Shown here piece after piece: positions 1,975 to 31,102 of a DNA stretch of 32,000 nucleotides. Made by a program: the position numbers and the translations under genes. Numbering within the stretch: position 1 is the stretch's first letter; each line of letters starts with the position of its first letter. Source of the DNA: Wallemia ichthyophaga EXF-994 (lineage: Eukaryota > Fungi > Basidiomycota); assembly GCF_000400465.1 (NCBI RefSeq), contig NW_008806302.1, positions 30,001-62,000 on the forward strand. The letters run 5' to 3'. Under the pieces are notes generated by a model, which was given only the letters and a program-made list of their open reading frames with translations, did no database searches and was not told the DNA's origin.

Positions 1975-2047
1975 TGGAGATGCCCGGAATTGAACCGGGG
2001 ACCTCTTCCATGCTAAGAAAGCGCCATAACCACTAGACTACATCCCC
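1975..2047 (-). tRNA. tRNA-Ala(AGC)
   Basis: Reverse complement GGGGATG...CTTAGCATG...GGTTCAATTCC...CATCTCCA forms a 73-nt cloverleaf with anticodon AGC and the G3:U70 Ala identity pair. It is followed by a long T-run terminator (A-run at ~1959-1969 on +). Confidence 0.97.
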
Positions 2048-3803: not shown

Positions 3804-3906
3804 GCTTTCGTGGCTTAGGGGTTATAGCGCCGTGTTAACATCGGCTCACCTTAATAGGTGAACAGTTGCTCCGCGGAGGTCGCCGGTTCGATTCCGGCCG
3901 AAAGCT
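3804..3906 (+). tRNA. tRNA-Val(AAC) with 30-nt canonical intron (3841-3870)
   Basis: Acceptor stem GCTTTCG/CGAAAGC, D-arm GCTT..TAGC, anticodon stem CCGTG/CGCGG with TTAACA, T-arm GCCGG-TTCGATT-CCGGC. The intron lies one base 3' of the anticodon and contains GTT complementary to AAC. A T-run terminator follows. Confidence 0.93.
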
Positions 3907-4611: not shown

Positions 4612-6411
4612 CTACACTGTTTTGTCGGCAAAAATTTCATTTAAGAAACTAACCCAATCGCTGTCTAATTCAGCAGCATTTAGGGGGTTGTTGCAATCAC
4701 GCATACATTCATCCAGCCATCCAGTGACTGACGGTGCCAGTGAGGGCTGTGCACATCTCAACTGAAGCGTATCGATCAACCCTTGGAACAATTCGTACGC
4801 CTTGCGCACCACACCATCCGTCAAACTTTTAGCCCTTAGCACTTGCATGGCTATATCAACATAACTCATGTGCTGTTCGTATGGTTGTTGAGCGCTGCGG
4901 AGAGTGCACACACTCAATATCATTATACCACTAGCGGTGATTGGACTCCAGTTTAGAAGCGCATCCGTGTAATTTACAACGAACCCACTTTCGTAATGCA
5001 GATAATAAAGTGTAGATAAAATGCTCTTTGCGGCATCTACACACAAGTTCAGCCCGCTAGTGCTTTGTGTCTTGAGATACTTCTTATTGATGAATATTTT
5101 CACGACACCATATCCTACTACCTTGAGACATTGTTGCTGCGAGGGCAAGTGTAAGGATTTCTGACAGCACCTCTTACCCCACTCATCCAAACGTCCATTC
5201 AAACTATCTACCATATCTACAGACACAACTTTCGATCTTTGCAGCGATACGACATCGGCTACGAGAGCATACAGGTCAATCATATTGTTGAAGTAGGTTA
5301 TTGAAGTGTCTTGTTTTATGTTAATACTCTCAGGTTTGGCCATGTCGATCCCATCTCGTAGTACTCGTCTACCACAGCTAATTGCGTAAGATTTATCGAG
5401 GATATAAAGCCCCCACAGTGCTCGCTTGCCTTCCTCGCACTGCGCTTTATCGAGCCTGCTGTCCTCAGCGAGGAGCACACCCAAGCCAATCACCGACCAG
5501 CAACTGCGGCAGTACTTTTGTGTGTTCTGCATTGCCAGTGCCTCCAAAACGACAGCCTGTATGGAGTGTACGGTGAGCGATGGCATAAGGAGGGCATTTG
5601 GCGCTTTGTGGGAGTACGTGTGCAGATAGGCGTCGGCGGAAGTGTGAGAGTGGTAGAGAGCGCCTAATGCGCATACCAAGAGCAACACACCTCCAAAATC
5701 TGCTGTTAGCTTACTGCTAGACACTCGCGCGAGGAATGCACTTTTGTCGGGAAACAGAGGCAGTGATGGATGGACATGGCTGAAATAGAGGTCTACTAGA
5801 GCGTAAACCAAGCTACTTTCACCGAAATCCGACTCATTGTAGTGCTGGTTGTAGTGCTTTGTGGAGGTAACGACATGACCATTAGCCTTGATGAGCGACT
5901 GGCGACTGTCTACGAATCCAGTAGCGAGAGCGAAGAGACCTTTATTGGATGCCATGCCAAATTCCCGTAGGTTTTCTTGGCTGTGCGGTGTTTGCTCTCC
6001 GCTGAGCCACATGGAACGTACAATATTTGAATACTCGGAATCAGAGTCTGGTTCTTGAGCGTGTGTAGAGCTATAAACAACGCTGTTCACTCTTCTCTTC
6101 TTGTGTAAGCTCTCGCTCGTGCCCACGCCCAGCTTACCCTCGAGCTCTTTCACCCTCTCCTCCAAACTGCGTACGTAAGCATAGGTGTGCCTCTTCTTGG
6201 GCGCACCATCTACGAATGTGCACGGCGTCTCTCTCTCGCCAGAGTGTCTCTTTTCAGCGCAATTGGAGCAAGTTTCTGGGTAGCGTTCGGCTGCGTCGCA
6301 CTTGATTTTCGATCGGCGGCAATAGTCACACTGCAGGAGTCAAAAGGTATTCTAATTTATACATCCACCCACTGCTCTCTTCAGTCGGCCCCTTTTATCA
6401 GATGATGACAT
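4612..6411 (-). CDS. Zn(II)2Cys6 fungal transcription factor with fungal TF (middle homology) domain
   Basis: ATG 6411, exon 6411-6373, 42-nt intron 6372-6331, then CDYCRRSKIKCDAAERYPETCSNCAEKRHSGERETPC leading into the 517-aa ORF (LVDLYFSHVHPSLPLF; KRALWGLYILDKSYAISCGR). Confidence 0.93.
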
Positions 6412-8881: not shown

Positions 8882-11232
8882 ATGAAAGACGCCAAAGAAA
8901 AACCTGCAAAGTCACGGAAGCAGAGGCCGCTATATAGCTGCGGTGGTGCGTATCCTTGCGTCAATTATCCCCGCTTACCCGTCACAATCCGCAGAATGCC
9001 GCAGACTCAAGTTGAAATGCGATCGCCAATGGCCATGCAACCAATGCAGACGGAGAGGCTGTTCAGCCATATGTCCGGATGGTACAATGAAAGGCGCAAC
9101 CATGTCCCGCCAGGCGCTCGTCGACAACACAAGCAACTTACTTTCGCGTATCGATCAGCTCGAGAGCAGCATCAGGTCCCAGGGCGGCATAGTCCCTCAC
9201 CCGGCCACTGAGCTCATTTGCAACGCAACTGCAGTGTTTAATTCCCCCAATTCCTCCGCTTACCCAACAACAACCCACAACGGCTTCGAGACGCATCAGG
9301 AGGACTTTGCTGAGAGTTTCGGTGCACTCACTGTTTCCAGAGAGGGCCAATCGCGCTATGTTGGTCCCAGCGCCGGCTCTGAGTGGCTCCAGAATGAGTC
9401 GCTGGAAGATACTGAGCAGGAAATTATTGACGAGAAGCGTCAGATTGGCGAGAGCTCTGATAGTCCGCCCTCCGATTTCCCATTCAGTGCGAGCAATAGT
9501 GGTGAAATCGTTACTGAGTTGTGGAAACAGCTGCCATCTCGAGAGATTGCTGGTGAGCTGACGGAGATCTACTACCGCACTTGCTCGTGTCTCTACAACT
9601 GCGTACAGCGCGATGTTTTCGAAAAGGATCTCGATATACTCTATGTTTATGTTCACCCAGACCCGCACAAGCTCGCTCGACTGTATATGGTCTTTGCGCT
9701 GGGCGTGTACTTCGACACTACCCGCTCTACCGACCACCCTGATTCGCAGCGCTTCTACAGCTATTCCAAATCCCTTCTCTCCGCTGGTGACTTTCTCGTC
9801 AAAAGCAGTATCCCCGCGGCGCAGACGCTGCACATGATGGGTCTCTATCTACTTAATAGGAATAGGTTGAGCGGGGCTGATTCTTATTATCCACTTCTCG
9901 GTGTACAGTTGCGCATTGCGCGTGCAATGGGTCTGCATCGCGACGGTGCGCGCTGGGGATTCACTCAGGCGGAGTTGAATGAGCGGCGGATGACGTTCTG
10001 GGAGACTCAGACGATGGACGTCTTTCAGTCTATCTGTTTTGGTAGGCCTTACTCGACGCAATTGCGCCATGTGGACTGCAAATTTCCCCGCGATGAACAC
10101 CCTGATGCGCAAAATGCAGGGTTTCAGACACTGCGTTACACGCTTGTCAGACTCTTGTGCAAGATCAGCGATGACATTTATAGCGTAAAGCCACCGACAT
10201 ATGATGTTGTCATTGCGCTCGATAGGGAAGTGCGGCAGTATGACAAAGACATACCACCCCATCTGCGCTGCAATGCTGCGGCCGTCGTGCGAAATAGTTC
10301 AAATTACCCTCTCAAGCGGGAAGCAGTGGATGGGGAGGAGTTGATTCTACAGCAGCACACACTCGCTATGAATGTGAATGAATGCCTACTCTATATAAAC
10401 AGACGCTATTTTGCACATGCACTCAAAACTCACCCTCAAAACCCTCTCAAGTCACCCTTCGCGCAGTCGTTCATTGCCGTAATGGAGTGTTGCAGGGTGG
10501 GTAGTTTTCCATGTGTTTGTTGGCTACATATACTCACACTTTCACTAGGTAATGGTCGCACTCGGTCAGAGCATCCACCGTCTCCTCCCGGACCTTTCTG
10601 CGCGGCACTTTTTCTTTTTCTATCATATGTTCAGCTTCGGGGTGTGCTCGGCAGCGTCCTGCATCATCTCGCCTGGATCTTCGATGGCAAGTGATGCGTG
10701 GATGGATCTCAACTCCATCACCGACCTCTGTGCACTACCCAGCGCAGGAAAGCGCGCAAATCAATTCGTACCGGCGCTCAATAAACTTCGGGAGCGTGCG
10801 CTTGTACGCTGCAAAGAACACATAGAAGCTAAGGTGCACAACACGGATGATCACGATAACGAACATATGGTCATGCTAGGTTTGGGAAGCAGGGTGGTGA
10901 CGACGGAAACGCAAACTACGCGTTTCAAAACGCCAACAAGTGGAGGAGTGTTGGATGGATTGTTCGAGAATGACAAGGGCCCCAATCCCTCTGATCAAAT
11001 CTACTCCCAACTCCTCAAACAGACTGAAGGTACACCGAGCAGTGCGGAAATGTTCAATAACCTTTGGAATATCCCAAATGACACCAACTCCGCTTTATCA
11101 CTCAGCGGTAGTACAAACGAATACAACAACATCTTCCCTAGCTCTCTCGACTTCATGGAAATGGATAGCGTACTTAATGGCACACAAAGCGACACAGATT
11201 GGACAGCTGTGCTGAGGAGTATGGGTTTATGA
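8882..11232 (+). CDS. Zn(II)2Cys6 fungal transcription factor with fungal TF domain
   Basis: Exons 8882-8945, 8995-10496 and 10549-11232 (introns 49 and 52 nt). Zn cluster CGECRRLKLKCDRQWPCNQCRRRGCSAIC; LRIARAMGLHRDG and ERRMTFWETQTMDVFQSICFGRP motifs. Confidence 0.95.
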
Positions 11233-12155: not shown

Positions 12156-13414
12156 GTTTGAGTGTTTCCTGGTGAGAACTAACTGACGTTTGCCGCTCTC
12201 GATCGATCGTTTCCCCGTATAGCTGATGTTGTATCTCGATCACGCATCAATTTTCCCCTGCTTATCCGCAGCTGGGCTTCTTGAGTGGAGTAAATCCGAG
12301 GACGCAGGAATTCCTCCTAATTCCTTGATTGCTCTCAGTACAGCTTGGTGGGGGGAAAATAAGATTCAGGGGCACTGCTGATGCTGTCCGCACACCCTTC
12401 GCAACCCTCGAATCGCAGCTGTCAGCATCTTCGGCTTCTTTATCCTTTAAATAGCTATCGAATTTTGAAAAGACTGGATGCTTTGAGTCTTTAGGTTTAT
12501 GAGCTTCTTCACTTGTCTTATTTCCTCACGATCCCTTTTCAAACAAGACGCGCGACGCGCCTTGTCAATTTTAAGCGAACAAGACTCGTAGCCGATGGCA
12601 AAAATGAAACACAGTCATAAAATAAAGTACATAATTAACTTATCTCAACAAATTGTTTTTCAATTATTGTGATATCTCCACAAAAGTTTTGTAGCACTAG
12701 TGGTATTTCGATTATATAAGACACGTCATGGGAAGAGTAGAATTTTATCAAAAAGAAAAAGCTTCTTTAATATCCTGTCTTCTGAAACTATGACGCGACC
12801 TTACTTGATTCTTTTCCCTCATCATTTAGTTGCTATAAATGCACCTAATGAAGCCAAAACACCGATTTCAGAGTGGATTTGACCCCACTTTCCTTTACAG
12901 TAAACAGTTTTACAAGGCTTATAATGAATTAAAGTTGTCTTACTTTTCCTCTGGGGTCAGGGTTAAGAGCTGGATACACCGCGCGTCGGAAATACATTAC
13001 GTGATTTGAGCGCAGTGTACTTAAGATATATGGAAGCTTGTGGTTTCTAAAAGCCCGATAAGTAATTAGCATCAATGAAGTGTGTGATACTCTCCGTATG
13101 TCTTATGTTGCGTGCGAACTTCCGAGCAGCGTTTAGAGGGCGATAGGAAGCCATGGTAGATAAAACAAGCCAAAAGTACAAATCAAAATTTGGGCTATCA
13201 ATTGAGCTCTTTTGTTTGAAGAATTTCCATTTAGGCAGACGGAAAATTTAACTCTGTGAATACTGGGCATGAGATAGAAATTCGAACAGATCTGAAATGA
13301 TTGAGAGTTCACAAAGTAATAATGCGTCAAAAATTACTCTTTAACACCAAAATTTAATTCACCTTCATACCTCGGCAATCTCTGCCCGCACTAACGCTAG
13401 GGTTACTTTGAGCA

Positions 13415-13422
13415 TATAAAAG
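13415..13422 (+). promoter_or_regulatory. TATA box of U2 copy 1
   Basis: TATAAAAG ~33 nt upstream of the predicted U2 5' end; duplicated at 18032-18039. Confidence 0.65.
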
Positions 13423-13447
13423 CGGCCTCTCTTCATCCTTAATCCTC

Positions 13448-13631
13448 ATCCTCTCTGGCCTTTTGGCTTAGATCAAGTGTAGTATCTGTTCTTCCAAGTT
13501 CGAACAACTTGGATCGCATAACTTATGCGACAAACGTTCGATCTAATTTTTATCTGCGTCCACTCACCCTCACTGCTTGCATAGGGTAAGTGGAAGATGG
13601 CCTTGTGTTGCACTACCGTTTGTGCCGTCAG
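13448..13631 (+). ncRNA. U2: U2 spliceosomal snRNA, copy 1
   Basis: ATCCTCTCTGGCCTTTTGGCTTAGATCAAGTGTAGTATCTGTTCTT (U2 5' domain with branch-recognition GTAGTA). Stem IIa CCAAGTT/AACTTGG has a loop complementary to downstream GTTCGA (IIc). Also present: stem IIb TCGCATAA/TTATGCGA, Sm site AATTTTTA, stem III, and stem IV with TTGCACTACC loop. Ends are approximate. Confidence 0.97.
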
Positions 13632-13864
13632 CGCACATTTATACTCCAACCCCATCACACATTTTAGCATGTCTCTGCTATTCTCACATAGCACTGACTT
13701 GTCGAAAGTTGTGAATTACCTACTATGGCGCCTAGATACTATGAGACGGACGTAAATTCAATTAAATTGACACCAAAGATGTTGTAAGATCATTATCAAA
13801 TGTATTTAGTAAAAGAAATACACAATTATCCGTTTTTATTGCGTATTCGGTGCCTCCAGCGAGC

Positions 13865-14530
13865 CTAACAGACGGAAGTTGCTGCTCCGATGTCCTCCTC
13901 ACGAGAGCCAGCGCCTCTGCTTTCACAACAGTCAACCATGCCTCCTGTGTTAATGCCGTTCACCTTTCCGGATGGTTAGAATGGTTTATTAGCTATCAAG
14001 GGCCATAACTTACGACTTTATAGATTGTCAGAGTGGTTCTCTGCAAAGCTAAGCCCAAACTTACGGACTGCAGATGTCAGAATCATCACTAAGCAAATAA
14101 AATGCTTACTTACGACTAATTGAGTTAGAGCGTTTTGCAAGCAAATTAAACCCCAAACTCAGGGATACATTGATGGAACACTTCCTGATTTTAGTTAGTG
14201 AGTTAAGTCTAATCTTAAATAGCAAGTACACACATCAAAGCGTGTGTTTTGATTGACGGCTGCACAGCAATCCTTAGTGACTAGAAAAGACAATTTTCAT
14301 CAGCTATGATTCACATATCGACCCAACGTACTTTGTCTTTCGACGCTGAATTATATGTTAGAAGGTGCTAATCAGTATGAAAAATTCTTACCAGCCGCCA
14401 CCGCCCGTGCAGACCTAATTATCAATTGGAAATGCTCAGAAGATCATACCGAACTCACCTCAGCTGGGCCACCAGCCGCGACGAGAGTGACGGTTGAGAG
14501 AAGAGCTGAAACAGTGATGAGCTTGAACAT
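13865..14530 (-). CDS. small secreted cysteine-rich protein (95 aa, 8 Cys, 9 exons incl. 2-, 3-, 2-nt microexons)
   Basis: Exons 14530-14459, 14414-14392, 14345-14332, 14280-14234, 14184-14159, 14115-14114, 14067-14065, 14015-14014 and 13963-13865 give MFKLITVSALLSTVTLVAAGGPAEVCTGGGGCVERQITKDCCAAVNQNTRFDEVFHQCIPDLLVNGINTGGMVDCCESRGAGSREEDIGAATSVC*. It has a signal peptide, a TATA (GTATAAAA) ~50 nt upstream, and is collinear with the paralog at 15987-16475. Confidence 0.8.
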
Positions 14531-15424
14531 TGTTGGTAGAATTGAGATGTTTTGAAAAGAGAATATAAAGACAGATTTTATACGTTAGAGAAGCTCGGAA
14601 GTTCCTAGCTTTTTAATTGCGATATATACTGATTCATTCCTCTGCATAATTATAGATTTCGTATAACTTCCGACATTTAGGCGAGGCGAGGGTGTAGCAA
14701 TATGGGCGCATTAGCACCTCAAAATACACTTTCAGTGATTACTAGATAGTCGAAAAGTACAGAAACCATCTTCAAGGCTGCTTGCTTATTCAACTTACGA
14801 CTAGATTAGACATAACTCGGATTTTAAGCGACACAAGATTGTTCCTAAGTCAAAAGAACGCGGAGAAAGAATGGCTGTAAGCATGCCAATTTGCGAATAC
14901 TTGTGATTATTGAGAAGACTTAATGCATTTTCACCTTAAAAGTGAGACTAAAGAAACAACCAGAACAATTATTTTTACATTTTGGATTATTCAAAGCCAA
15001 AATTTCCACTTTCGCTGCATCTTGACAATCTATCGCTAGGTTAGTGCAGGAGTATTCAGTCAGGCAGTATATTTGAAAAAAAAAGTTCGAGGCTTCGTCG
15101 CTTTTTGAACTGCATCTATTCTATCCAAACTTCCTGTGATGTGACAAAAGCATCACGATATCCAAAGATTTGACTCGTAGCTGATGTGATTTTGTAACAC
15201 AATAGTGCTGCATACTCTAAATTCCCTAAAACGATATCCGGTCAATTTAATGAGCCGAAGCGAGATGAGATCAGTAGTTAATATTTGAAATTAGTTATGT
15301 ATTCATTATGAATGTTACGACTGTCTTTAGAACTGCACGACTAAGCTGATCAGCAATCAAGCCTATTCATCTGAAGATCTATTAAATCCAATCAAATATT
15401 GTAGTCAGTAGCACAAGTAGAAAG

Positions 15425-15986: not shown

Positions 15987-16475
15987 TTAACAGGTTGGGT
16001 TATCAGCTCCAAAGCTTTCTGCGCTGCTACCGGCGCCTCTGCTTTCGCAGCAGCTGACCATTGCGCCGGTATCGACAGAGTTGACGCCATATCTTTCAGT
16101 CGCTGTGAGAATGTCTTGTTGCTGCTAGTAAAAGTAAGATTCACGGTACACATTGGTTCAAACGCTCGTCGAACCTTGCTGATTGATCTTGCGTGAGAGT
16201 TAAAATCATGTCTTAATGTGTTCAAAGGCTTGCTTACCAACTTCAGCGCATCAATCCTTAGTGACTAGAAGGAGAAATTTCCATCAGCAAACATTGTCAA
16301 TTTTGAGTAAACTTACTTTGATACTCAGTGCTAAGCACGTGTAAGTTAGCATGGTCTCTTGATTCAGCATGTTAAACATCTACCATCCGCCTGAATCTGT
16401 GCAGATTTCTGAACCGCCAGCCGCAATGATTGCAAGTGCTGAAAGAAGAGCTGAAAGAGTAGCGATTTTGTACAT
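15987..16475 (-). pseudogene. paralog of the small secreted 8-Cys protein with in-frame TGA at conserved Cys3
   Basis: Exons 16475-16384, 16330-16317, 16264-16238, 16187-16145 and 16092-15987 give MYKIATLSALLSALAIIAAGGSEICTDSGGCTEYQITKD*CAEVDQSARFDERLNQCVPYGVNSVDTGAMVSCCESRGAGSSAESFGADNPTC*. TGA at 16253-16251 aligns to TGC in the paralog. TATA ~50 nt upstream. Confidence 0.8.
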
Positions 16476-18002: not shown

Positions 18003-18331
18003 CCGCACTAACGCTAGGGTTACTTTGAGCATATAAAAGCGGCCTCTCTTCATCCTTAATCCTCATCCTCTCTGGCCTTTTGGCTTAGATCAAGTGTAGT
18101 ATCTGTTCTTCCAAGTTCGAACAACTTGGATCGCATAACTTATGCGACAAACGTTCGATCTAATTTTTATCTGCGTCCACTCACCCTCACTGCTTGCATA
18201 GGGTAAGTGGAAGATGGCCTTGTGTTGCACTACCGCTTGTGCCGTCAGCGCACATTTATACTCCAACCCCATCACACATTTTAGCATGTCTCTGCTATTC
18301 TCACATAGCACTGACTTGTCGAAAGTTGTGA
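18003..18331 (+). repeat. 329-bp direct repeat, copy 2 (U2 snRNA gene unit)
   Basis: Matches 13386-13714 with one substitution. Confidence 0.97.
18065..18248 (+). ncRNA. U2: U2 spliceosomal snRNA, copy 2
   Basis: Same sequence and structure as copy 1 apart from C18236 in the stem IV region. Confidence 0.97.
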
Positions 18332-23463: not shown

Positions 23464-25219
23464 ATGACAGTTATTAAATCAATATTCAGCGATGCAGATA
23501 TCCCCAAGATTAGCCTCTTCGATCACATTTTGCCGCAGGAACAATCTAAGAACAGCAGTGTGGTCTACGTGGATGCACAAACAGGGCGCTGCTTAACAAT
23601 CTCAGAGCTGCGCAGAGACGCCCTCCGCCTGGCTTATGGACTAAGGAAGTACCACAACATCGGCAGAGGAGATAGCGTGCTTATCGTAAACCACAACTCA
23701 ATTACATATCCAGTACTCTTCTTCGCCGTGATAGCCACTGGCGCAACGGCATCACTCGCCAATCCAGCCAACAAGCACCTCGAAATGTCCCATCAGATAA
23801 AAGATAGCGACATCTCCTTCGTTTTCGCAAATCCTGACAAAATAGAGCTATGCAGTATCATACTGAGGGAAAGAGGCTGGTCGGAGAATAGGGTGAGCGA
23901 TAGGGTAGTATCAGCTACTGAAAACAGCCCTAGAAGTTTCAAATCATACGCTCAACTCCTTTGCAACGACCTGCAGAAGGGTGTTCCTGAGACATTTGCA
24001 GGCGAGGATGCTCACAGTGTTGCCGTCACATGCTATAGCAGTGGTACGACAGGTGTAGCAAAAGGAGTGATGACGACACATTACAATCTCGTCGCCAACC
24101 TCACACAATTAGACTGGTCACGCGCGTACAGCACACAGAAATCAGATGTTGTCTTGGCTGTCCTCCCTTACTACCACATCTTTGGGCTCACATCCCTTCT
24201 ACTCAACTTCCTCAAGAGGGAGAATATGAGTGTAGTCTTGCCCCGCTTCTCCCTTGAAGCTTTCGGTGCTGCTGTCGAGAAATACAGGGTAACGCTCACG
24301 GCGGTTGTACCACCGATTCTCCACTCGATCGCGAAAGAAGATGTGGAAAGGAGGCATGGCATGTCCAGTCTGAAAATTCTCAATGTGGGCGCTGCGCCTG
24401 TCAGCCCCAAGCTGATAGAGCAGATTGGGGAAAAATTCAATAGCAGCGTGCTCGTCTCGAATGGCTATGGTCTCACTGAGACTAGTCCAGTCACGCACAA
24501 ACTGCCACTAGAATACGCCAGGTCACATAGCGGCTATATTGGCAGAATGCTCTCAAACACCACCGCGCGTCTCGTGGATGAAAATGGCAAGGATGTACCT
24601 GGAGATAACAAGTCGAGTGGAGAGTGAGTATTTAGACTTTGTATGGTTCCCATTTCACACCCCACCCCAGACTCTGGATTAAAGGGCCGCAAGTCATGAG
24701 GGGTTATTTGAATAACCCCCAAGCTACAGCCCAGTGCATGACTTCAGACGGATATTTCAAGACTGGCGATATAGCAATATACGATGATCAGACGTTCCTC
24801 TTCAAGATAGTAGGCAGACTGAAGGTTAGTGGGATAGCTACGAAAAAATTCGTAGCTAAAATGTACTCCAGGAAATGATAAAATACAAAGGCATTCAGGT
24901 GGCACCGTCATCTCTAGAAGCGGTGCTTTTATCTCATCCTCAAGTGAATGATGCGGCTGTTATAGGCGTTTACGACGACAGACAGGTGACGGAACTTCCC
25001 AGAGCCTATATCGTGCCTCAGGATGCAGCCAATTTCGACAACCAAGTATTTTGCAATGAAATAGAAGCCTGGGTGGCAGACATAGTTGCAAATTATTCCA
25101 AATTGCGCGGAGGCGTGCACACAATCGACGTCATCCCTAAAACTCCTTCTGGGAAAATTGTCAGAAGACATTTGCACATGCTTGCCGCTCAGCAGCATAT
25201 AGGACTGGCTAAGCTCTAG
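23464..25219 (+). CDS. 4-coumarate-CoA ligase-like acyl-CoA synthetase (ANL family), peroxisomal
   Basis: Exons 23464-24623, 24671-24824 and 24872-25219 (two 47-nt introns). Motifs CYSSGTTGVAKG, VLPYYHIFG, GYGLTETSP, GELWIKGPQVMRGY, YFKTGD, RLKEMIKYKG and IPKTPSGKI. C-terminal AKL is a PTS1. Confidence 0.95.
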
Positions 25220-28944: not shown

Positions 28945-31102
28945 TCAGCCGTATTGACTTGAATATTGAATGATATCTACCTCATCGATGGATGGATTGG
29001 ATGCGTGACAACTTTGATTGTGTTCTTCCATGTATTTTTCCAGCTCTTCAACTGTAGGTGGATGCGGTGGAGGGTGTGGCGGCTTAAACGCTCTCTTCAC
29101 ACTTTCGGATTCAAAATTGCATGAGTTTCGGATCTTTTCGAGTGTTATTTGAACGGCTGGAGCGTCACATGGATGATATTCGAGTAGCTGCTCAATTGCT
29201 CCTAAGATACCCCTCGCAACATATAGCGCCAGTACTAGATCAGAATCGAGTCCAAATAAATCAAGACATCGCAAAGCTTGTACTGATAACACACCTAGAA
29301 TCATTGGAGCATCACGTATACTGCCTCCGATGAACTTTAAGAATAGTCAAGAGATGCTCAGAGATGGATTGTGTTGTAAAACTCACCTGCCTATAGATGT
29401 AAGAATGATCTTCAAGCCACTTCTTTGCTTGTATTCTGGTGAAGTATCCTCTTTGTCTTATTCTAGAGTCATTCATGCGTTTCAGCTTTGCGGTGAGCAC
29501 TAGCTTTGTGATGAAGAGGGCATTTGAAACTTGCCATCGAGGTATACCGTTATGGCAAGTGTGTTTACCCAGCTCCGCCTCAATATTGTCAGCCTCTTGG
29601 ATTATTTTCAGCGCTCTCAAATGAAAATCCAGTGGCGGTAGTCGCAATCTCATAGCGCCATGACACAGCAGCTTGCCTCGATCTAGCAATGCATACATAG
29701 TGCGCCTTGACCAATCTCGCTCATATTGATCTGGAAGATTAGCAACGAAGTGCTCGGAAGTCAGAAAAATACCGTAGTTGGAGCTGTCGTTAATGTAAAG
29801 AGGGTTGAGTGTTGGCTGAAACATTTGCTGGTACCAGCTTTGGTTGAGCGCGCCCCATACCACTCTTCTAATCTCCTCAGCTTTCACCATATTCTCATCT
29901 GACTCGTCTAATGCGAACCTAGCTAAAAACCGAAACCTGATACCTTCCTTCTTTTGCGTTGATTGCTCATTGTAAGTCCACTTCATACATGGGCAGTCCA
30001 GCTGCGTTGATATCTCTTCAATTTGCGAAAACGAGTGCGATTCTGATACTGGGGTTAGCGGTTCCGGTTGTGCTGGCTGATCCAAATCTGCCGTTTTAAT
30101 CGGTACAGCGTCGTCATCAAGAACGTAAAGCACTTTGTCAGCATCGAGAGTAGTCAGTCCGAGTGTTCTGATGACTGTATCAGCAATTGTCAAGCTGGCA
30201 CCCAACCGTTGTACATCAAAGAGGGGCTTTGGAAGAAACTCATAATACTGCAGACAAACTGCAGCCTGCGCCAAGCCTAGAGATATATTGCTAGTGCTGA
30301 TAGCTGACATTAGGTGGCTATGTGACCTCTCAGCGTAATTCAGAGCCTTGAGTTTCGACTCGGTAGCAAAAGTTTGGTCGCATCTACCTTTAAAAACATA
30401 CGAGATTGCCAGAAGGGCATATATAAGCGCTGGCTCAATAGCGCCTCTCTTTCTTGAGTTCATAATTACTTCGAAGAAGCTAGGTAGGTGAAACATTGTT
30501 GCGATGAAGTCACCTCTTTGAAAGACTAGTGACAGGTCGGCAGCAATAACTTTAAGAGTCGTATTTCTATCCAGCCGAGACTCACTCATTTTTTCACCAA
30601 TCAAGTAATCCCAATACGTGTTCTGCTGGTAATTTCGATCTGGATGAAGAAGAAGTGGAGGCGAAGTGGAGGTCGCATTGTACGACGTCTGGTATGCAAA
30701 CTCAGGAAAGTTGCTAGTGTACAGTATATTCGCATCATTGCTATTTCTTGACTTGAAAAACGGATGCGGTAACGTTGGTTCATTGTCGTCGTGATCGGTT
30801 TCTTCGTAATCCGTGTCAGAATACGTCGTCCCACTAGTACTTGGCCTAGACAAAGCCATCTCTTGGTTCTCGAAGGATGCTGCAGCAGACATTGCTGCTT
30901 GTTTGGCAGCTTCAATCCGCTTAGCGCTAGCTCTTGGCTTGCGATCTTTTCCGCGTCTCTTTATGACGCCTTCAAAGACGCATTCAAGGGCCTTCTTGGT
31001 GCATCTATCACACGGGCCGTCTTGATTAGAGCTGATACACTTGGATTTTGATCTGCGACAGCTCAGGCAAGCGTTGATGCCCCTGCTGGTCTGATTTTGC
31101 AT
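28945..31102 (-). CDS. Zn(II)2Cys6 fungal transcription factor
   Basis: CLSCRRSKSKCISSNQDGPCDRCTKKALEC cluster. The 52-nt intron 29386-29335 (GTGAGT..AAG) joins track ORFs 31102-29312 and 29304-28945 in frame. Confidence 0.92.

What the first reader, a model, noticed from the sequence alone, without database searches (positions are those of the whole stretch)
13964..14158. Chain of three consecutive 2-, 3- and 2-nt microexons in a secreted Cys-rich protein gene
Seen on the minus strand: TAG|TC|GTAAGT (14115-14114), CAG|TCC|GTAAGT (14067-14065) and AAG|TC|GTAAGT (14015-14014). They are separated by four introns of ordinary length for this genome (43, 46, 49 and 50 nt), each with a CTRAC branch motif near its acceptor. 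Only with all three included does ..CIP-GA + TC + TCC + TC restore frame (GAT CTC CTC = DLL) into the last exon VNGINTGGMVDCC. Skipping only TCC keeps frame and gives exactly the Cys5-Cys6 spacing of the paralog. Skipping one TC frameshifts; skipping all three gives GAG-TGA, a stop. Inference: a ~195-nt locus encodes 7 coding nt and could act as a splicing-controlled switch between long-loop, short-loop and truncated forms of a secreted protein. Microexons are known in fungi, but I am not aware of a described run of three this small.
Basis: partly seen in the sequence, partly recalled or inferred. Interest (0 to 1): 0.9.

Follow-up and report, generated by a model that had tools for sequence, protein, structure and literature searches.

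The report
Intron quadruplicated, leaving three 2-3-nt exons

Summary
The window is 100% identical to W. ichthyophaga EXF-994. The gene is J056_002871, a DUF5948 secreted 8-Cys protein.

Three homologues have one phase-2 intron in the Pro codon, followed by C/A + two codons. In one of them (L003) this reads CC|intron|C CTC CTC. The window has CC..|I1|TC|I2|TCC|I3|TC|I4|GTG, so the microexons spell T CTC CTC. I1-I4 are diverged copies of that single intron. They are 44% identical outside the splice signals and 87% identical within them.

In five other W. ichthyophaga assemblies the first donor is a canonical CC|GTGAGT. There the three microexons give CIP-LL-VNG, the family's exact C-X15-CC spacing.

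So the chain is real sequence and almost certainly a set of obligatory constitutive exons. The "splicing switch" idea has no support. All annotated models (109-130 aa) read through the array and look wrong.

The gene is transcribed and induced 28-fold at 30% NaCl, but no splice-junction data were reachable.

Verdict: a new variant of known kinds (ultra-short microexons; same-gene intron duplication).

The parts
13865..14530 (-). Whole gene (ATG 14530 to TAG 13867-13865). It is J056_002871 / GME4749_g of W. ichthyophaga EXF-994: a DUF5948 secreted 8-Cys protein with 9 exons under the microexon model.
   Evidence: Pfam DUF5948, E 1.6e-19; 100% identity to EXF-994 over 6666 nt; salt-induced expression.
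14159..14184 (-). Exon 5 (..EVFHQCIP + GA), ending at the cryptic donor used in this allele. In strains with the intact donor the exon ends at 14162 (..ATCCC).
14161..14162 (-). Site of the polymorphic 1-nt deletion. A G is present between these two bases in 5 other assemblies (CC|GTGAGT) and absent here (CCTGAGT).
14116..14158 (-). Intron I1 (43 nt here with donor GTTTGG; 47 nt with GTGAGT in G-allele strains). It sits at the ancestral intron position; branch site CTAAC, acceptor TAG.
14114..14115 (-). Microexon 1, TC.
14068..14113 (-). Intron I2 (46 nt; GTAAGT, CTGAC, CAG), a copy of the ancestral intron.
14065..14067 (-). Microexon 2, TCC.
14016..14064 (-). Intron I3 (49 nt; GTAAGT, CTGAC, AAG), a copy of the ancestral intron.
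14014..14015 (-). Microexon 3, TC.
13964..14013 (-). Intron I4 (50 nt; GTAAGT, CTAAC, AAG), a copy of the ancestral intron.
13865..13963 (-). Last exon (VNGINTGGMVDCCESRGAGSREEDIGAATSVC*). It is in frame only through the microexon chain.
   Evidence: dN/dS 0.055-0.08 against homologues.

Best explanation
**What it is**
In this DUF5948 gene family, a single short intron lies in phase 2 of the Pro codon after Cys5. In the W. ichthyophaga lineage this intron was copied three more times. The copies landed 2, 5 and 7 nt downstream of the original site and did not change the mRNA. The result is four tandem, homologous introns of about 45-50 nt, separated by exons TC, TCC and TC.

**How it works (inferred)**
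- Each copy has its own GTRAGT donor, CTRAC branch site and YAG acceptor.
- Each is recognised by intron definition and removed by an ordinary U2-type splicing reaction.
- Neighbouring splice sites are only 2-3 nt apart, so the four reactions must run one after another. Each microexon is simply carried at the end of the growing 5' exon.
- Removing all four is obligatory for the protein. It rebuilds CC-T CTC CTC-GTG, which encodes Pro-Leu-Leu-Val.

**The window's allele**
The window (EXF-994) carries a derived allele that has lost the G of the first donor. The transcript can stay in frame only by using the cryptic GTTTGG donor 3 nt downstream, which inserts one Asp (PDLLV). If that donor is not used, this allele is null.

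**Shown versus inferred**
- Shown: the sequence anatomy, homology of the four introns, the single-intron state in relatives, conservation of the signals, the donor polymorphism, and transcription with salt induction.
- Inferred: the actual splicing, its order, use of GTTTGG, and how the copies arose. My best guess for the origin is reverse splicing of the excised intron back into its own pyrimidine-repeat mRNA a few bases out of register, followed by reverse transcription and recombination.
For: 1. Single intron in relatives. L003 reads ATT CC|GTAAGT..47 nt..GCAG|C CTC CTC GCA AAC. The microexons read T CTC CTC. J056_002800 and the in-window paralog also have one intron at this same site and phase.
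2. With the microexons included, the gene aligns without gaps over 58 codons with 7 homologues.
3. Assemblies with the intact CC|GTGAGT donor give CIPLLVNG, the consensus C-X15-CC spacing.
4. I1-I4 and the L003 intron resemble each other far more than they resemble control introns: mean z 3.2 against 0.4-0.8, Mann-Whitney p 1.3e-5.
5. Among I1-I4, splice-signal columns are 87% identical and all other columns 44% identical (Fisher p 1.3e-11). This points to long-standing selection on the splicing of each copy.
6. The exon downstream of the array has dN/dS 0.055-0.08 against homologues, at saturated dS.
7. All microexons, donors, branch sites and acceptors are invariant in 10 assemblies, apart from the first-donor indel.
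8. The gene is transcribed: RPKM 0.77 at 10% NaCl and 21.4 at 30% NaCl (PMC3849046 Table S6).
9. The intron sizes match this gene's other introns (44-51 nt) and the genome mean of 61 nt.
10. Exons of 3 nt or less are validated by long reads in another basidiomycete (13 of 1 nt, 57 of 2 nt, 27 of 3 nt; bioRxiv 10.1101/2024.05.10.593147). A 1-nt exon is confirmed by RNA-seq in Fusarium (PMC12940212).
11. RT-mediated remodelling is active in the family. One homologue has lost both 3' introns and others are intronless.
Against: - No spliced transcript or junction read was available. The predicted spliced proteins are not in the 15-billion-protein collection, and the metagenome scans were empty even for the exon control.
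- A clean insertion mechanism would leave the frame restorable on paper even if the insertions had killed the gene.
- The window's own allele lacks a canonical first donor.
- Expression is about 3000-fold lower than that of the paralog J056_002800.
- The neighbouring paralog is decaying.
- dS to every comparator is saturated, so selection cannot be assigned specifically to the period after the intron copies arose.
- Homology of I2 to the others is the weakest (z 1-2.8).
Confidence: 0.72

Rival explanations
1. Dead locus. The extra intron copies, or at least the later donor deletion in EXF-994, inactivated the gene. The array is not spliced accurately, and transcripts are degraded or encode a truncated protein (..QCIPEFGV*).
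For: - The EXF-994 allele has lost the GT of the first donor.
- Reading through I1 hits TAA after 4 codons.
- Expression is modest (RPKM 21, against 59,657 for the paralog).
- The adjacent paralog has an in-frame TGA.
- No transcript evidence for correct splicing exists.
Against: - The ORF and all 8 Cys are intact in 10 assemblies.
- Splice signals of all four copies are kept while the rest of the intron sequence has decayed to 44% identity.
- dN/dS of the downstream exon is 0.055-0.08.
- GTTTGG keeps G at +5, and GTTTGT serves as a donor in a homologue.
- The gene is still induced 28-fold by salt.

This rival is more credible for the deletion allele alone (about 0.3-0.4) than for the gene in the species as a whole.
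Confidence: 0.15
2. Regulated switch. Alternative inclusion of the microexons toggles between long-loop, short-loop and truncated proteins.
For: Skipping TCC alone stays in frame in both alleles. The gene responds to salinity.
Against: - The full chain already gives the family-standard spacing in G-allele strains. Skipping TCC there would give a spacing of X14, which no homologue has.
- Exon skipping was seen once in the whole W. ichthyophaga transcriptome and makes up 0.5% of events in C. cinerea.
- All three extra donors are perfect GTAAGT, which argues for constitutive use.
Confidence: 0.06
3. One long 189-nt intron runs from a GTTTAA donor (after CCT GAG TTT GGG) to the acceptor at 13964, giving CIPEFGVNG. 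On this view the internal GTAAGT/AG pairs are unused relics.
For: It is in frame in the window allele, and EFG resembles the YG of the paralog.
Against: - The donor has A at +5.
- The length is three times the genome mean.
- In the five G-allele assemblies the extended exon reads CCG TGA, an in-frame stop before that donor, so the model cannot be the gene's normal structure.
- Three perfect donor/branch/acceptor sets would have to be ignored by an intron-definition spliceosome.
Confidence: 0.03

Closest known systems
Ultra-short (1-3 nt) microexons validated in fungi and plants: C. cinerea long-read annotation, Fusarium CYP621A 1-nt exon, Arabidopsis APC11/VPS55 1-nt exons
   Same: - Exons of 3 nt or less are flanked by canonical short introns.
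- They are indispensable for the reading frame.
- They lie inside a conserved motif or spacing.
- Annotators routinely miss them; here all models (109-130 aa) read through the array.
   Different: - Here three such exons follow one another directly (2, 3, 2 nt).
- All four flanking introns are paralogous copies of one ancestral intron.
- The published cases are single microexons, or adjacent ones that are larger (rice 5+12 nt; human RPS24 3/18/22 bp).
- Those cases have transcript proof and this one does not.
Same-gene intron duplication (SGD) / intron transposition within one transcript (Collemare et al., PMC3609843)
   Same: - Introns in one gene are similar in sequence.
- The extra copies are absent from homologues.
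- The flanking exon sequence is not duplicated, which in that paper is the class attributed to transposition within the same transcript.
   Different: - The copies lie only 2-3 nt apart, not in distant parts of the gene.
- They are old and diverged (44% identity outside the signals), not near-identical.
- There were three successive gains at one spot. PMC3514964 notes that no general model exists for adjacent intron gains.
Stwintrons and complex intervening sequences (Flipphi, Fekete et al.; Lipomyces, Hypoxylaceae)
   Same: Several U2-type intron units are packed at one position and must be removed by consecutive splicing reactions. Duplication of intron elements is proposed as the origin.
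   Different: In a stwintron the internal intron interrupts a splice signal of the external one and no exon bases lie between the units. Here every unit has complete signals of its own and 2-3 coding bases remain between units.
Introner-like elements (ILEs)
   Same: Both involve intron multiplication as a source of new introns in fungi.
   Different: ILEs occur in many unrelated genes, are longer than regular introns and fold stably. Here there are no further copies in 32 kb, the length is ordinary and the folding is unremarkable (z -0.35 to +0.15).
KP6-like small secreted proteins (for the protein product)
   Same: The predicted fold of the family best matches the KP6 alpha subunit and Zt-KP6-1: Foldseek probability 0.89-1.0, TM-scores normalised to query and target 0.52-0.53 and 0.61-0.63. 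The protein is small, secreted and has four disulfides' worth of Cys.
   Different: - There is no sequence similarity to any PDB chain.
- The model confidence is only moderate (pLDDT 70).
- The Foldseek E-value is 0.055.
- The function is untested.
- It is not a Pfam hydrophobin, despite the UniRef names.

Membership tests
Obligatory ultra-short microexon (3 nt or less) | Flanked on both sides by complete canonical splice signals, with introns of normal size | tested here: met
   GTAAGT x3, CTRAC with the branch A 9-12 nt from the 3' end, YAG acceptors, introns of 43-50 nt.
Obligatory ultra-short microexon (3 nt or less) | Inclusion is required for the frame and reproduces the conserved protein sequence of homologues | tested here: met
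   Only full inclusion (or skipping TCC) is in frame. The PLL residues and the 58-codon gap-free alignment match homologues.
Obligatory ultra-short microexon (3 nt or less) | Junctions observed in transcripts | not testable with these tools
   The spliced proteins are absent from the collection. The metagenome scans were empty, including the control. The published RNA-seq gives only read counts.
Same-gene intron duplication / intron transposition | Sequence similarity between introns of the same gene, beyond the splice signals | tested here: met
   Within-family z 3.2 against 0.4-0.8 for control introns, p 1.3e-5. I2 is the weakest member.
Same-gene intron duplication / intron transposition | Extra copies absent from homologues (a gain, not a loss elsewhere) | tested here: met
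   A single intron at this site in L003, J056_002800 and the in-window paralog.
Same-gene intron duplication / intron transposition | Flanking exon sequence not duplicated (mRNA unchanged) | tested here: met
   CCT CTC CTC GTG here against CCC CTC CTC GCA in L003: the same length, with substitutions only.
Same-gene intron duplication / intron transposition | Mechanism: reverse splicing followed by RT and recombination | not testable with these tools
   Circumstantial only: the insertions are clean, all lie within 7 nt in a YC|TC repeat, and RT-type 3' intron loss is seen in the family.
Stwintron | An internal intron interrupts the donor, branch site or acceptor of an external intron | tested here: not met
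   Each unit's signals are intact, and 2-3 exon bases separate the units.
Introner-like element | Many near-identical copies in unrelated genes; longer than normal introns; stable secondary structure | tested here: not met
   No other copies in the window, normal length, folding z about 0. A genome-wide count was not possible.
Recursive splicing (zero-length exon) | Juxtaposed AG|GT with no retained bases | tested here: not met
   2-3 bases are retained at each site and are needed for the frame.
DUF5948 (PF19373) | Pfam model match above the gathering score | tested here: met
   70.2 bits against a cut-off of 23.7, E 1.6e-19. All 22 homologues carry PF19373.
Hydrophobin | Pfam hydrophobin match and the C-CC-C-C-CC-C cysteine pattern | tested here: not met
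   No hydrophobin hit at E up to 1. The cysteine pattern is C-C-CC-C-CC-C.

The most novel reading that the evidence does not exclude
The array records three successive out-of-register re-insertions of an excised intron into its own mRNA, 2, 5 and 7 nt downstream of the original junction. These would have occurred by reverse splicing, aided by the repeated YC|TC context of CC-TC-TCC-TC, and been fixed through reverse transcription and recombination.

If so, it would be a natural, still-functional example of adjacent intron gain by reverse splicing. It would also be the shortest known chain of consecutive exons. The segregating first-donor deletion adds a built-in natural experiment on cryptic-donor rescue.
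Probability: 0.3. Interest if true: 0.8.

Novelty: new variant of a known kind. Interest (0 to 1): 0.62.

Why it matters
**Intron gain.** How new spliceosomal introns arise is still argued, and clear cases with a visible donor intron are rare. Here the parent intron and three daughters sit side by side. The pre-gain state survives in relatives, and the mRNA is unchanged. That pattern fits clean insertion (reverse-splicing type) better than tandem DNA duplication, which would add exon bases.

**Limits of splicing.** If confirmed, an intron-definition spliceosome can process four introns separated by 2-3 nt. That sets a lower bound for exon chains.

**Annotation.** Every deposited model of this gene (109-130 aa in 10 assemblies) is probably wrong. 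Gene finders and short-read aligners would miss similar cases elsewhere.

**The protein family.** DUF5948 contains one of the most strongly salt-induced and most highly expressed transcripts of the most halophilic fungus known, and it may have a KP6-like fold.

Tried and rejected
- **Tandem Repeats Finder** found nothing in 13800-14400. The copies are too diverged, so homology had to be shown by pairwise alignment z-scores against control introns.
- **Simple tandem DNA duplication (intron plus flank)** as the origin is rejected as the simplest model. It would add the flank bases to the mRNA, whereas the mRNA has the same length and CTCCTC sequence as in L003.
- **Single long intron with a GTTTAA donor (EFG model)** is rejected because G-allele strains have an in-frame TGA before it.
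- **Exact look-ups of five predicted products** (DLL, DL, EFG and two truncations): none is in the collection.
- **Metagenome scan for the spliced junction**: 0 hits. The exon-only control also gave 0, so the result is uninformative.
The family was modelled from paralog P0009 instead.
- **Introner-like element idea**: no other copies in the window and no stable fold.
- **A second microexon chain in the family** (W. mellicola L017, where annotated models disagree): only ordinary introns at other positions.
- **L001 (strain E3P86) as an allelic intron-less version of this locus**: rejected, because its upstream 1.4 kb does not match the window. It is a paralog.

Full report
**1. What is in the sequence**

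On the minus strand a small gene runs from ATG 14530 to TAG 13867-13865. With short GT..AG introns it encodes a 95-aa protein with a signal peptide and 8 Cys. This matches Pfam DUF5948 (E 1.6e-19).

Between exon 5 (..EVFHQCIP, 14184-14159) and the last exon (VNGINTGGMVDCC.., 13963-13865) lie 195 nt. They read GA|GTTTGG..TTAG|TC|GTAAGT..GCAG|TCC|GTAAGT..AAAG|TC|GTAAGT..GAAAG|GTG. The branch A lies 9-12 nt from each 3' end.

Of the eight possible inclusion patterns, only all three microexons (PDLLV) or skipping TCC alone (PDLV) reach the normal stop. AG-N2-3-GTAAGT occurs three times within 103 nt here. About 1.6 are expected in the whole window on both strands.

**2. Where the window comes from**

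The best protein hits are all Wallemia. The window is 100% identical over 6666 nt to W. ichthyophaga EXF-994 scaffold KE007252.1. The gene is J056_002871, also called GME4749_g.

Its deposited model (110 aa) and the models from other strains (109, 123 and 130 aa) all translate part of the array, for example ..CIPDRNLGLALQRTTLTIYKVVNG... This roughly doubles a spacing that is otherwise fixed in the family.

**3. Relatives show what the seven bases are**

- A homologue on a Logan contig (L003) has the same five upstream-type introns but only one intron here: ATT CC|GTAAGTTTAGGCTTTAAATGGCTTATAAACCACTCTAATATGCGCAG|C CTC CTC GCA AAC. This encodes CIP-LL-ANG.
- The highly expressed paralog J056_002800 and the paralog inside the window also have one intron at this Pro-codon, phase-2 site. 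One intron is therefore the ancestral state.
- The window's microexons TC+TCC+TC spell T CTC CTC, the same CTCCTC.
- With them included, the gene aligns without a gap over 58 codons with seven homologues.

The three extra introns are therefore clean insertions 2, 5 and 7 nt downstream of the old junction. The mRNA is unchanged apart from point substitutions.

**4. The four introns are copies of the ancestral one**

After removing the donor hexamer and the acceptor, I1-I4 and the L003 intron align with a mean z of 3.2. The L003 intron scores about 5 against I1, about 6 against I4, 3.6 against I3 and 2.8 against I2. Comparisons with six other introns of these genes give 0.4-0.8 (Mann-Whitney p 1.3e-5).

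Among I1-I4, the splice-signal columns are 87% identical and all other columns 44% identical (Fisher p 1.3e-11). The copies are therefore old, and each has kept its donor, branch site and acceptor.

They do not fold unusually. No further copies occur in the window. They do not look like introner-like elements.

**5. The extra Asp is a strain polymorphism, not a hint of skipping**

In five other W. ichthyophaga assemblies the sequence is ATCCC|GTGAGTTTGG. This is a canonical donor at the ancestral position. These assemblies are GCA_004918895.1, GCA_004918315.1, GCA_004918065.1, GCA_004918305.1 and GCA_004918335.1.

In those assemblies CC+TC+TCC+TC+GTG gives Pro-Leu-Leu-Val, the exact C-X15-CC spacing of the family.

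EXF-994 and three further assemblies (GCA_004917865.1, GCA_004918415.1, GCA_004918445.1) lack that G. Because independent assemblies share it, the deletion is real and not a sequencing error.

In this allele the only in-frame route is the cryptic GTTTGG donor 3 nt downstream, which adds TGA to the exon and one Asp to the protein. GTTTGG keeps the G at +5, and GTTTGT serves as a donor in L003, so rescue is plausible but unproven. Without it the allele is null (..QCIPEFGV*).

Everything else in the array is invariant across the 10 assemblies, except one base at position -5 of the I4 acceptor.

**6. Is the gene alive?**

- The exon downstream of the array has dN/dS 0.055-0.08 against L001 and L003. 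dS is saturated, so the signal cannot be dated.
- In Zajc et al. 2013 (PMC3849046, Table S6) GME4749_g has RPKM 0.77 at 10% NaCl and 21.4 at 30% NaCl (5 against 143 reads, log2 4.8).
- Its paralog GME4675_g (J056_002800) goes from 2582 to 59,657.
- That paper reports a mean intron length of 61 bp. Alternative splicing there is dominated by intron retention, with a single exon-skipping event genome-wide.
- No junction-level data were reachable.

**7. Mechanism**

How it works (inferred): there are four independent short introns, each defined across the intron. Adjacent sites are 2-3 nt apart, so they are removed one after another. Each microexon rides at the end of the growing upstream exon. 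This is the same logic as for the validated 1-nt exons of Arabidopsis and Fusarium. It also applies to the 97 exons of 3 nt or less in the long-read annotation of C. cinerea.

How it arose (inferred, weaker): tandem DNA duplication of intron plus flank would lengthen the mRNA, which is not seen. Clean insertion fits intron transposition within the same transcript, the class described by Collemare et al. (PMC3609843). The four junction contexts are CC|TC, TC|TC, CC|TC and TC|GT, within the run CC-TC-TCC-TC. This suggests re-insertion a few bases out of register.

RT-mediated remodelling is evidently active in this family. L001 has lost both 3' introns, and L004 and L005 are intronless.

**8. 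The protein**

A family model built on paralog P0009 (pLDDT 70, pTM 0.58) best matches the KP6 alpha subunit and Zt-KP6-1. Foldseek probability is 0.89-1.0, the TM-scores normalised to query and target are 0.52-0.53 and 0.61-0.63, and the E-value is 0.055 or above.

There is no PDB sequence hit and no hydrophobin match. The residues coded by the microexons fall in the loop between a strand and the second helix, where one extra residue may be tolerated.

**9. Verdict**

- The microexon chain is very probably real and obligatory (0.72).
- The 'switch' interpretation is not supported.
- The case extends two known kinds, ultra-short microexons and same-gene intron duplication. I found no described run of three consecutive exons of 3 nt or less, but the literature search was limited.
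- Direct cDNA evidence is the missing piece.

Noticed in passing
window 13448-13636 (+) and 18065-18253 (+); direct repeat 13386-13714 / 18003-18331; L008 179-370 (-): Two U2 snRNA genes (Rfam, 108-111 bits) sit inside a 329-nt, 99.7%-identical direct repeat that brackets both DUF5948 genes. A third U2 gene lies just upstream of the paralog J056_002800 on another scaffold. U2 and DUF5948 genes therefore seem to have been duplicated together.
   Followed up: partly
window 15987-16475 (-); TGA at 16253-16251: The second DUF5948 gene in the window has TGA in place of the first Cys of the invariant TKDCC motif. Two of its donors have A at +5 (GTAGAT, GTGAAT), where J056_002800 has GTAGGT and GTGAGT. 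It looks like a decaying pseudogene.
   Followed up: partly
window 14795-14812 (-): About 270 nt upstream of the ATG there is another ..CTAATCTAG|TC|GTAAGTTGAATAAGC.. that resembles the I1/microexon-1/I2 junction. It could be chance, a 5'-UTR intron boundary or a stray fragment of the intron family.
   Followed up: no
L001 1501-1925; L002 1501-1946; L004; L005; L017 801-1177: Intron positions in this small gene family vary greatly. One W. ichthyophaga paralog keeps the three 5' introns but has none in the 3' half. A W. hederae copy has an intron inside ANG|INT. W. mellicola-type copies are intronless or have introns at other sites.
   Followed up: partly
P0009 / L008 1501-1990 (J056_002800, GME4675_g): This DUF5948 paralog reaches RPKM 59,657 at 30% NaCl (23-fold induced) in the published transcriptome. 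That places it among the most abundant salt-induced transcripts, yet the family has no known function. The predicted fold is KP6-like.
   Followed up: partly
window gene 13865-14530 in 10 assemblies (L006, L007, L010-L016): The same gene is annotated as 109, 110, 123 or 130 aa in different W. ichthyophaga assemblies. Each model reads through a different part of the intron array, and UniRef propagates the name 'Hydrophobin' without Pfam support.
   Followed up: yes
window 3804-3906 (+) and 1975-2047 (-): One tRNA hit spans 103 nt, probably an intron-containing tRNA that ARAGORN in bacterial mode missed. There is also a tRNA-Ala(AGC).
   Followed up: no
window 4612-6165 (-), 8943-10694 (+), 29312-31102 (-): The window holds three long ORFs with fungal transcription-factor domains (Fungal_trans, Zn2Cys6). 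There is also an AMP-binding enzyme fragment at 23464-24627.
   Followed up: no
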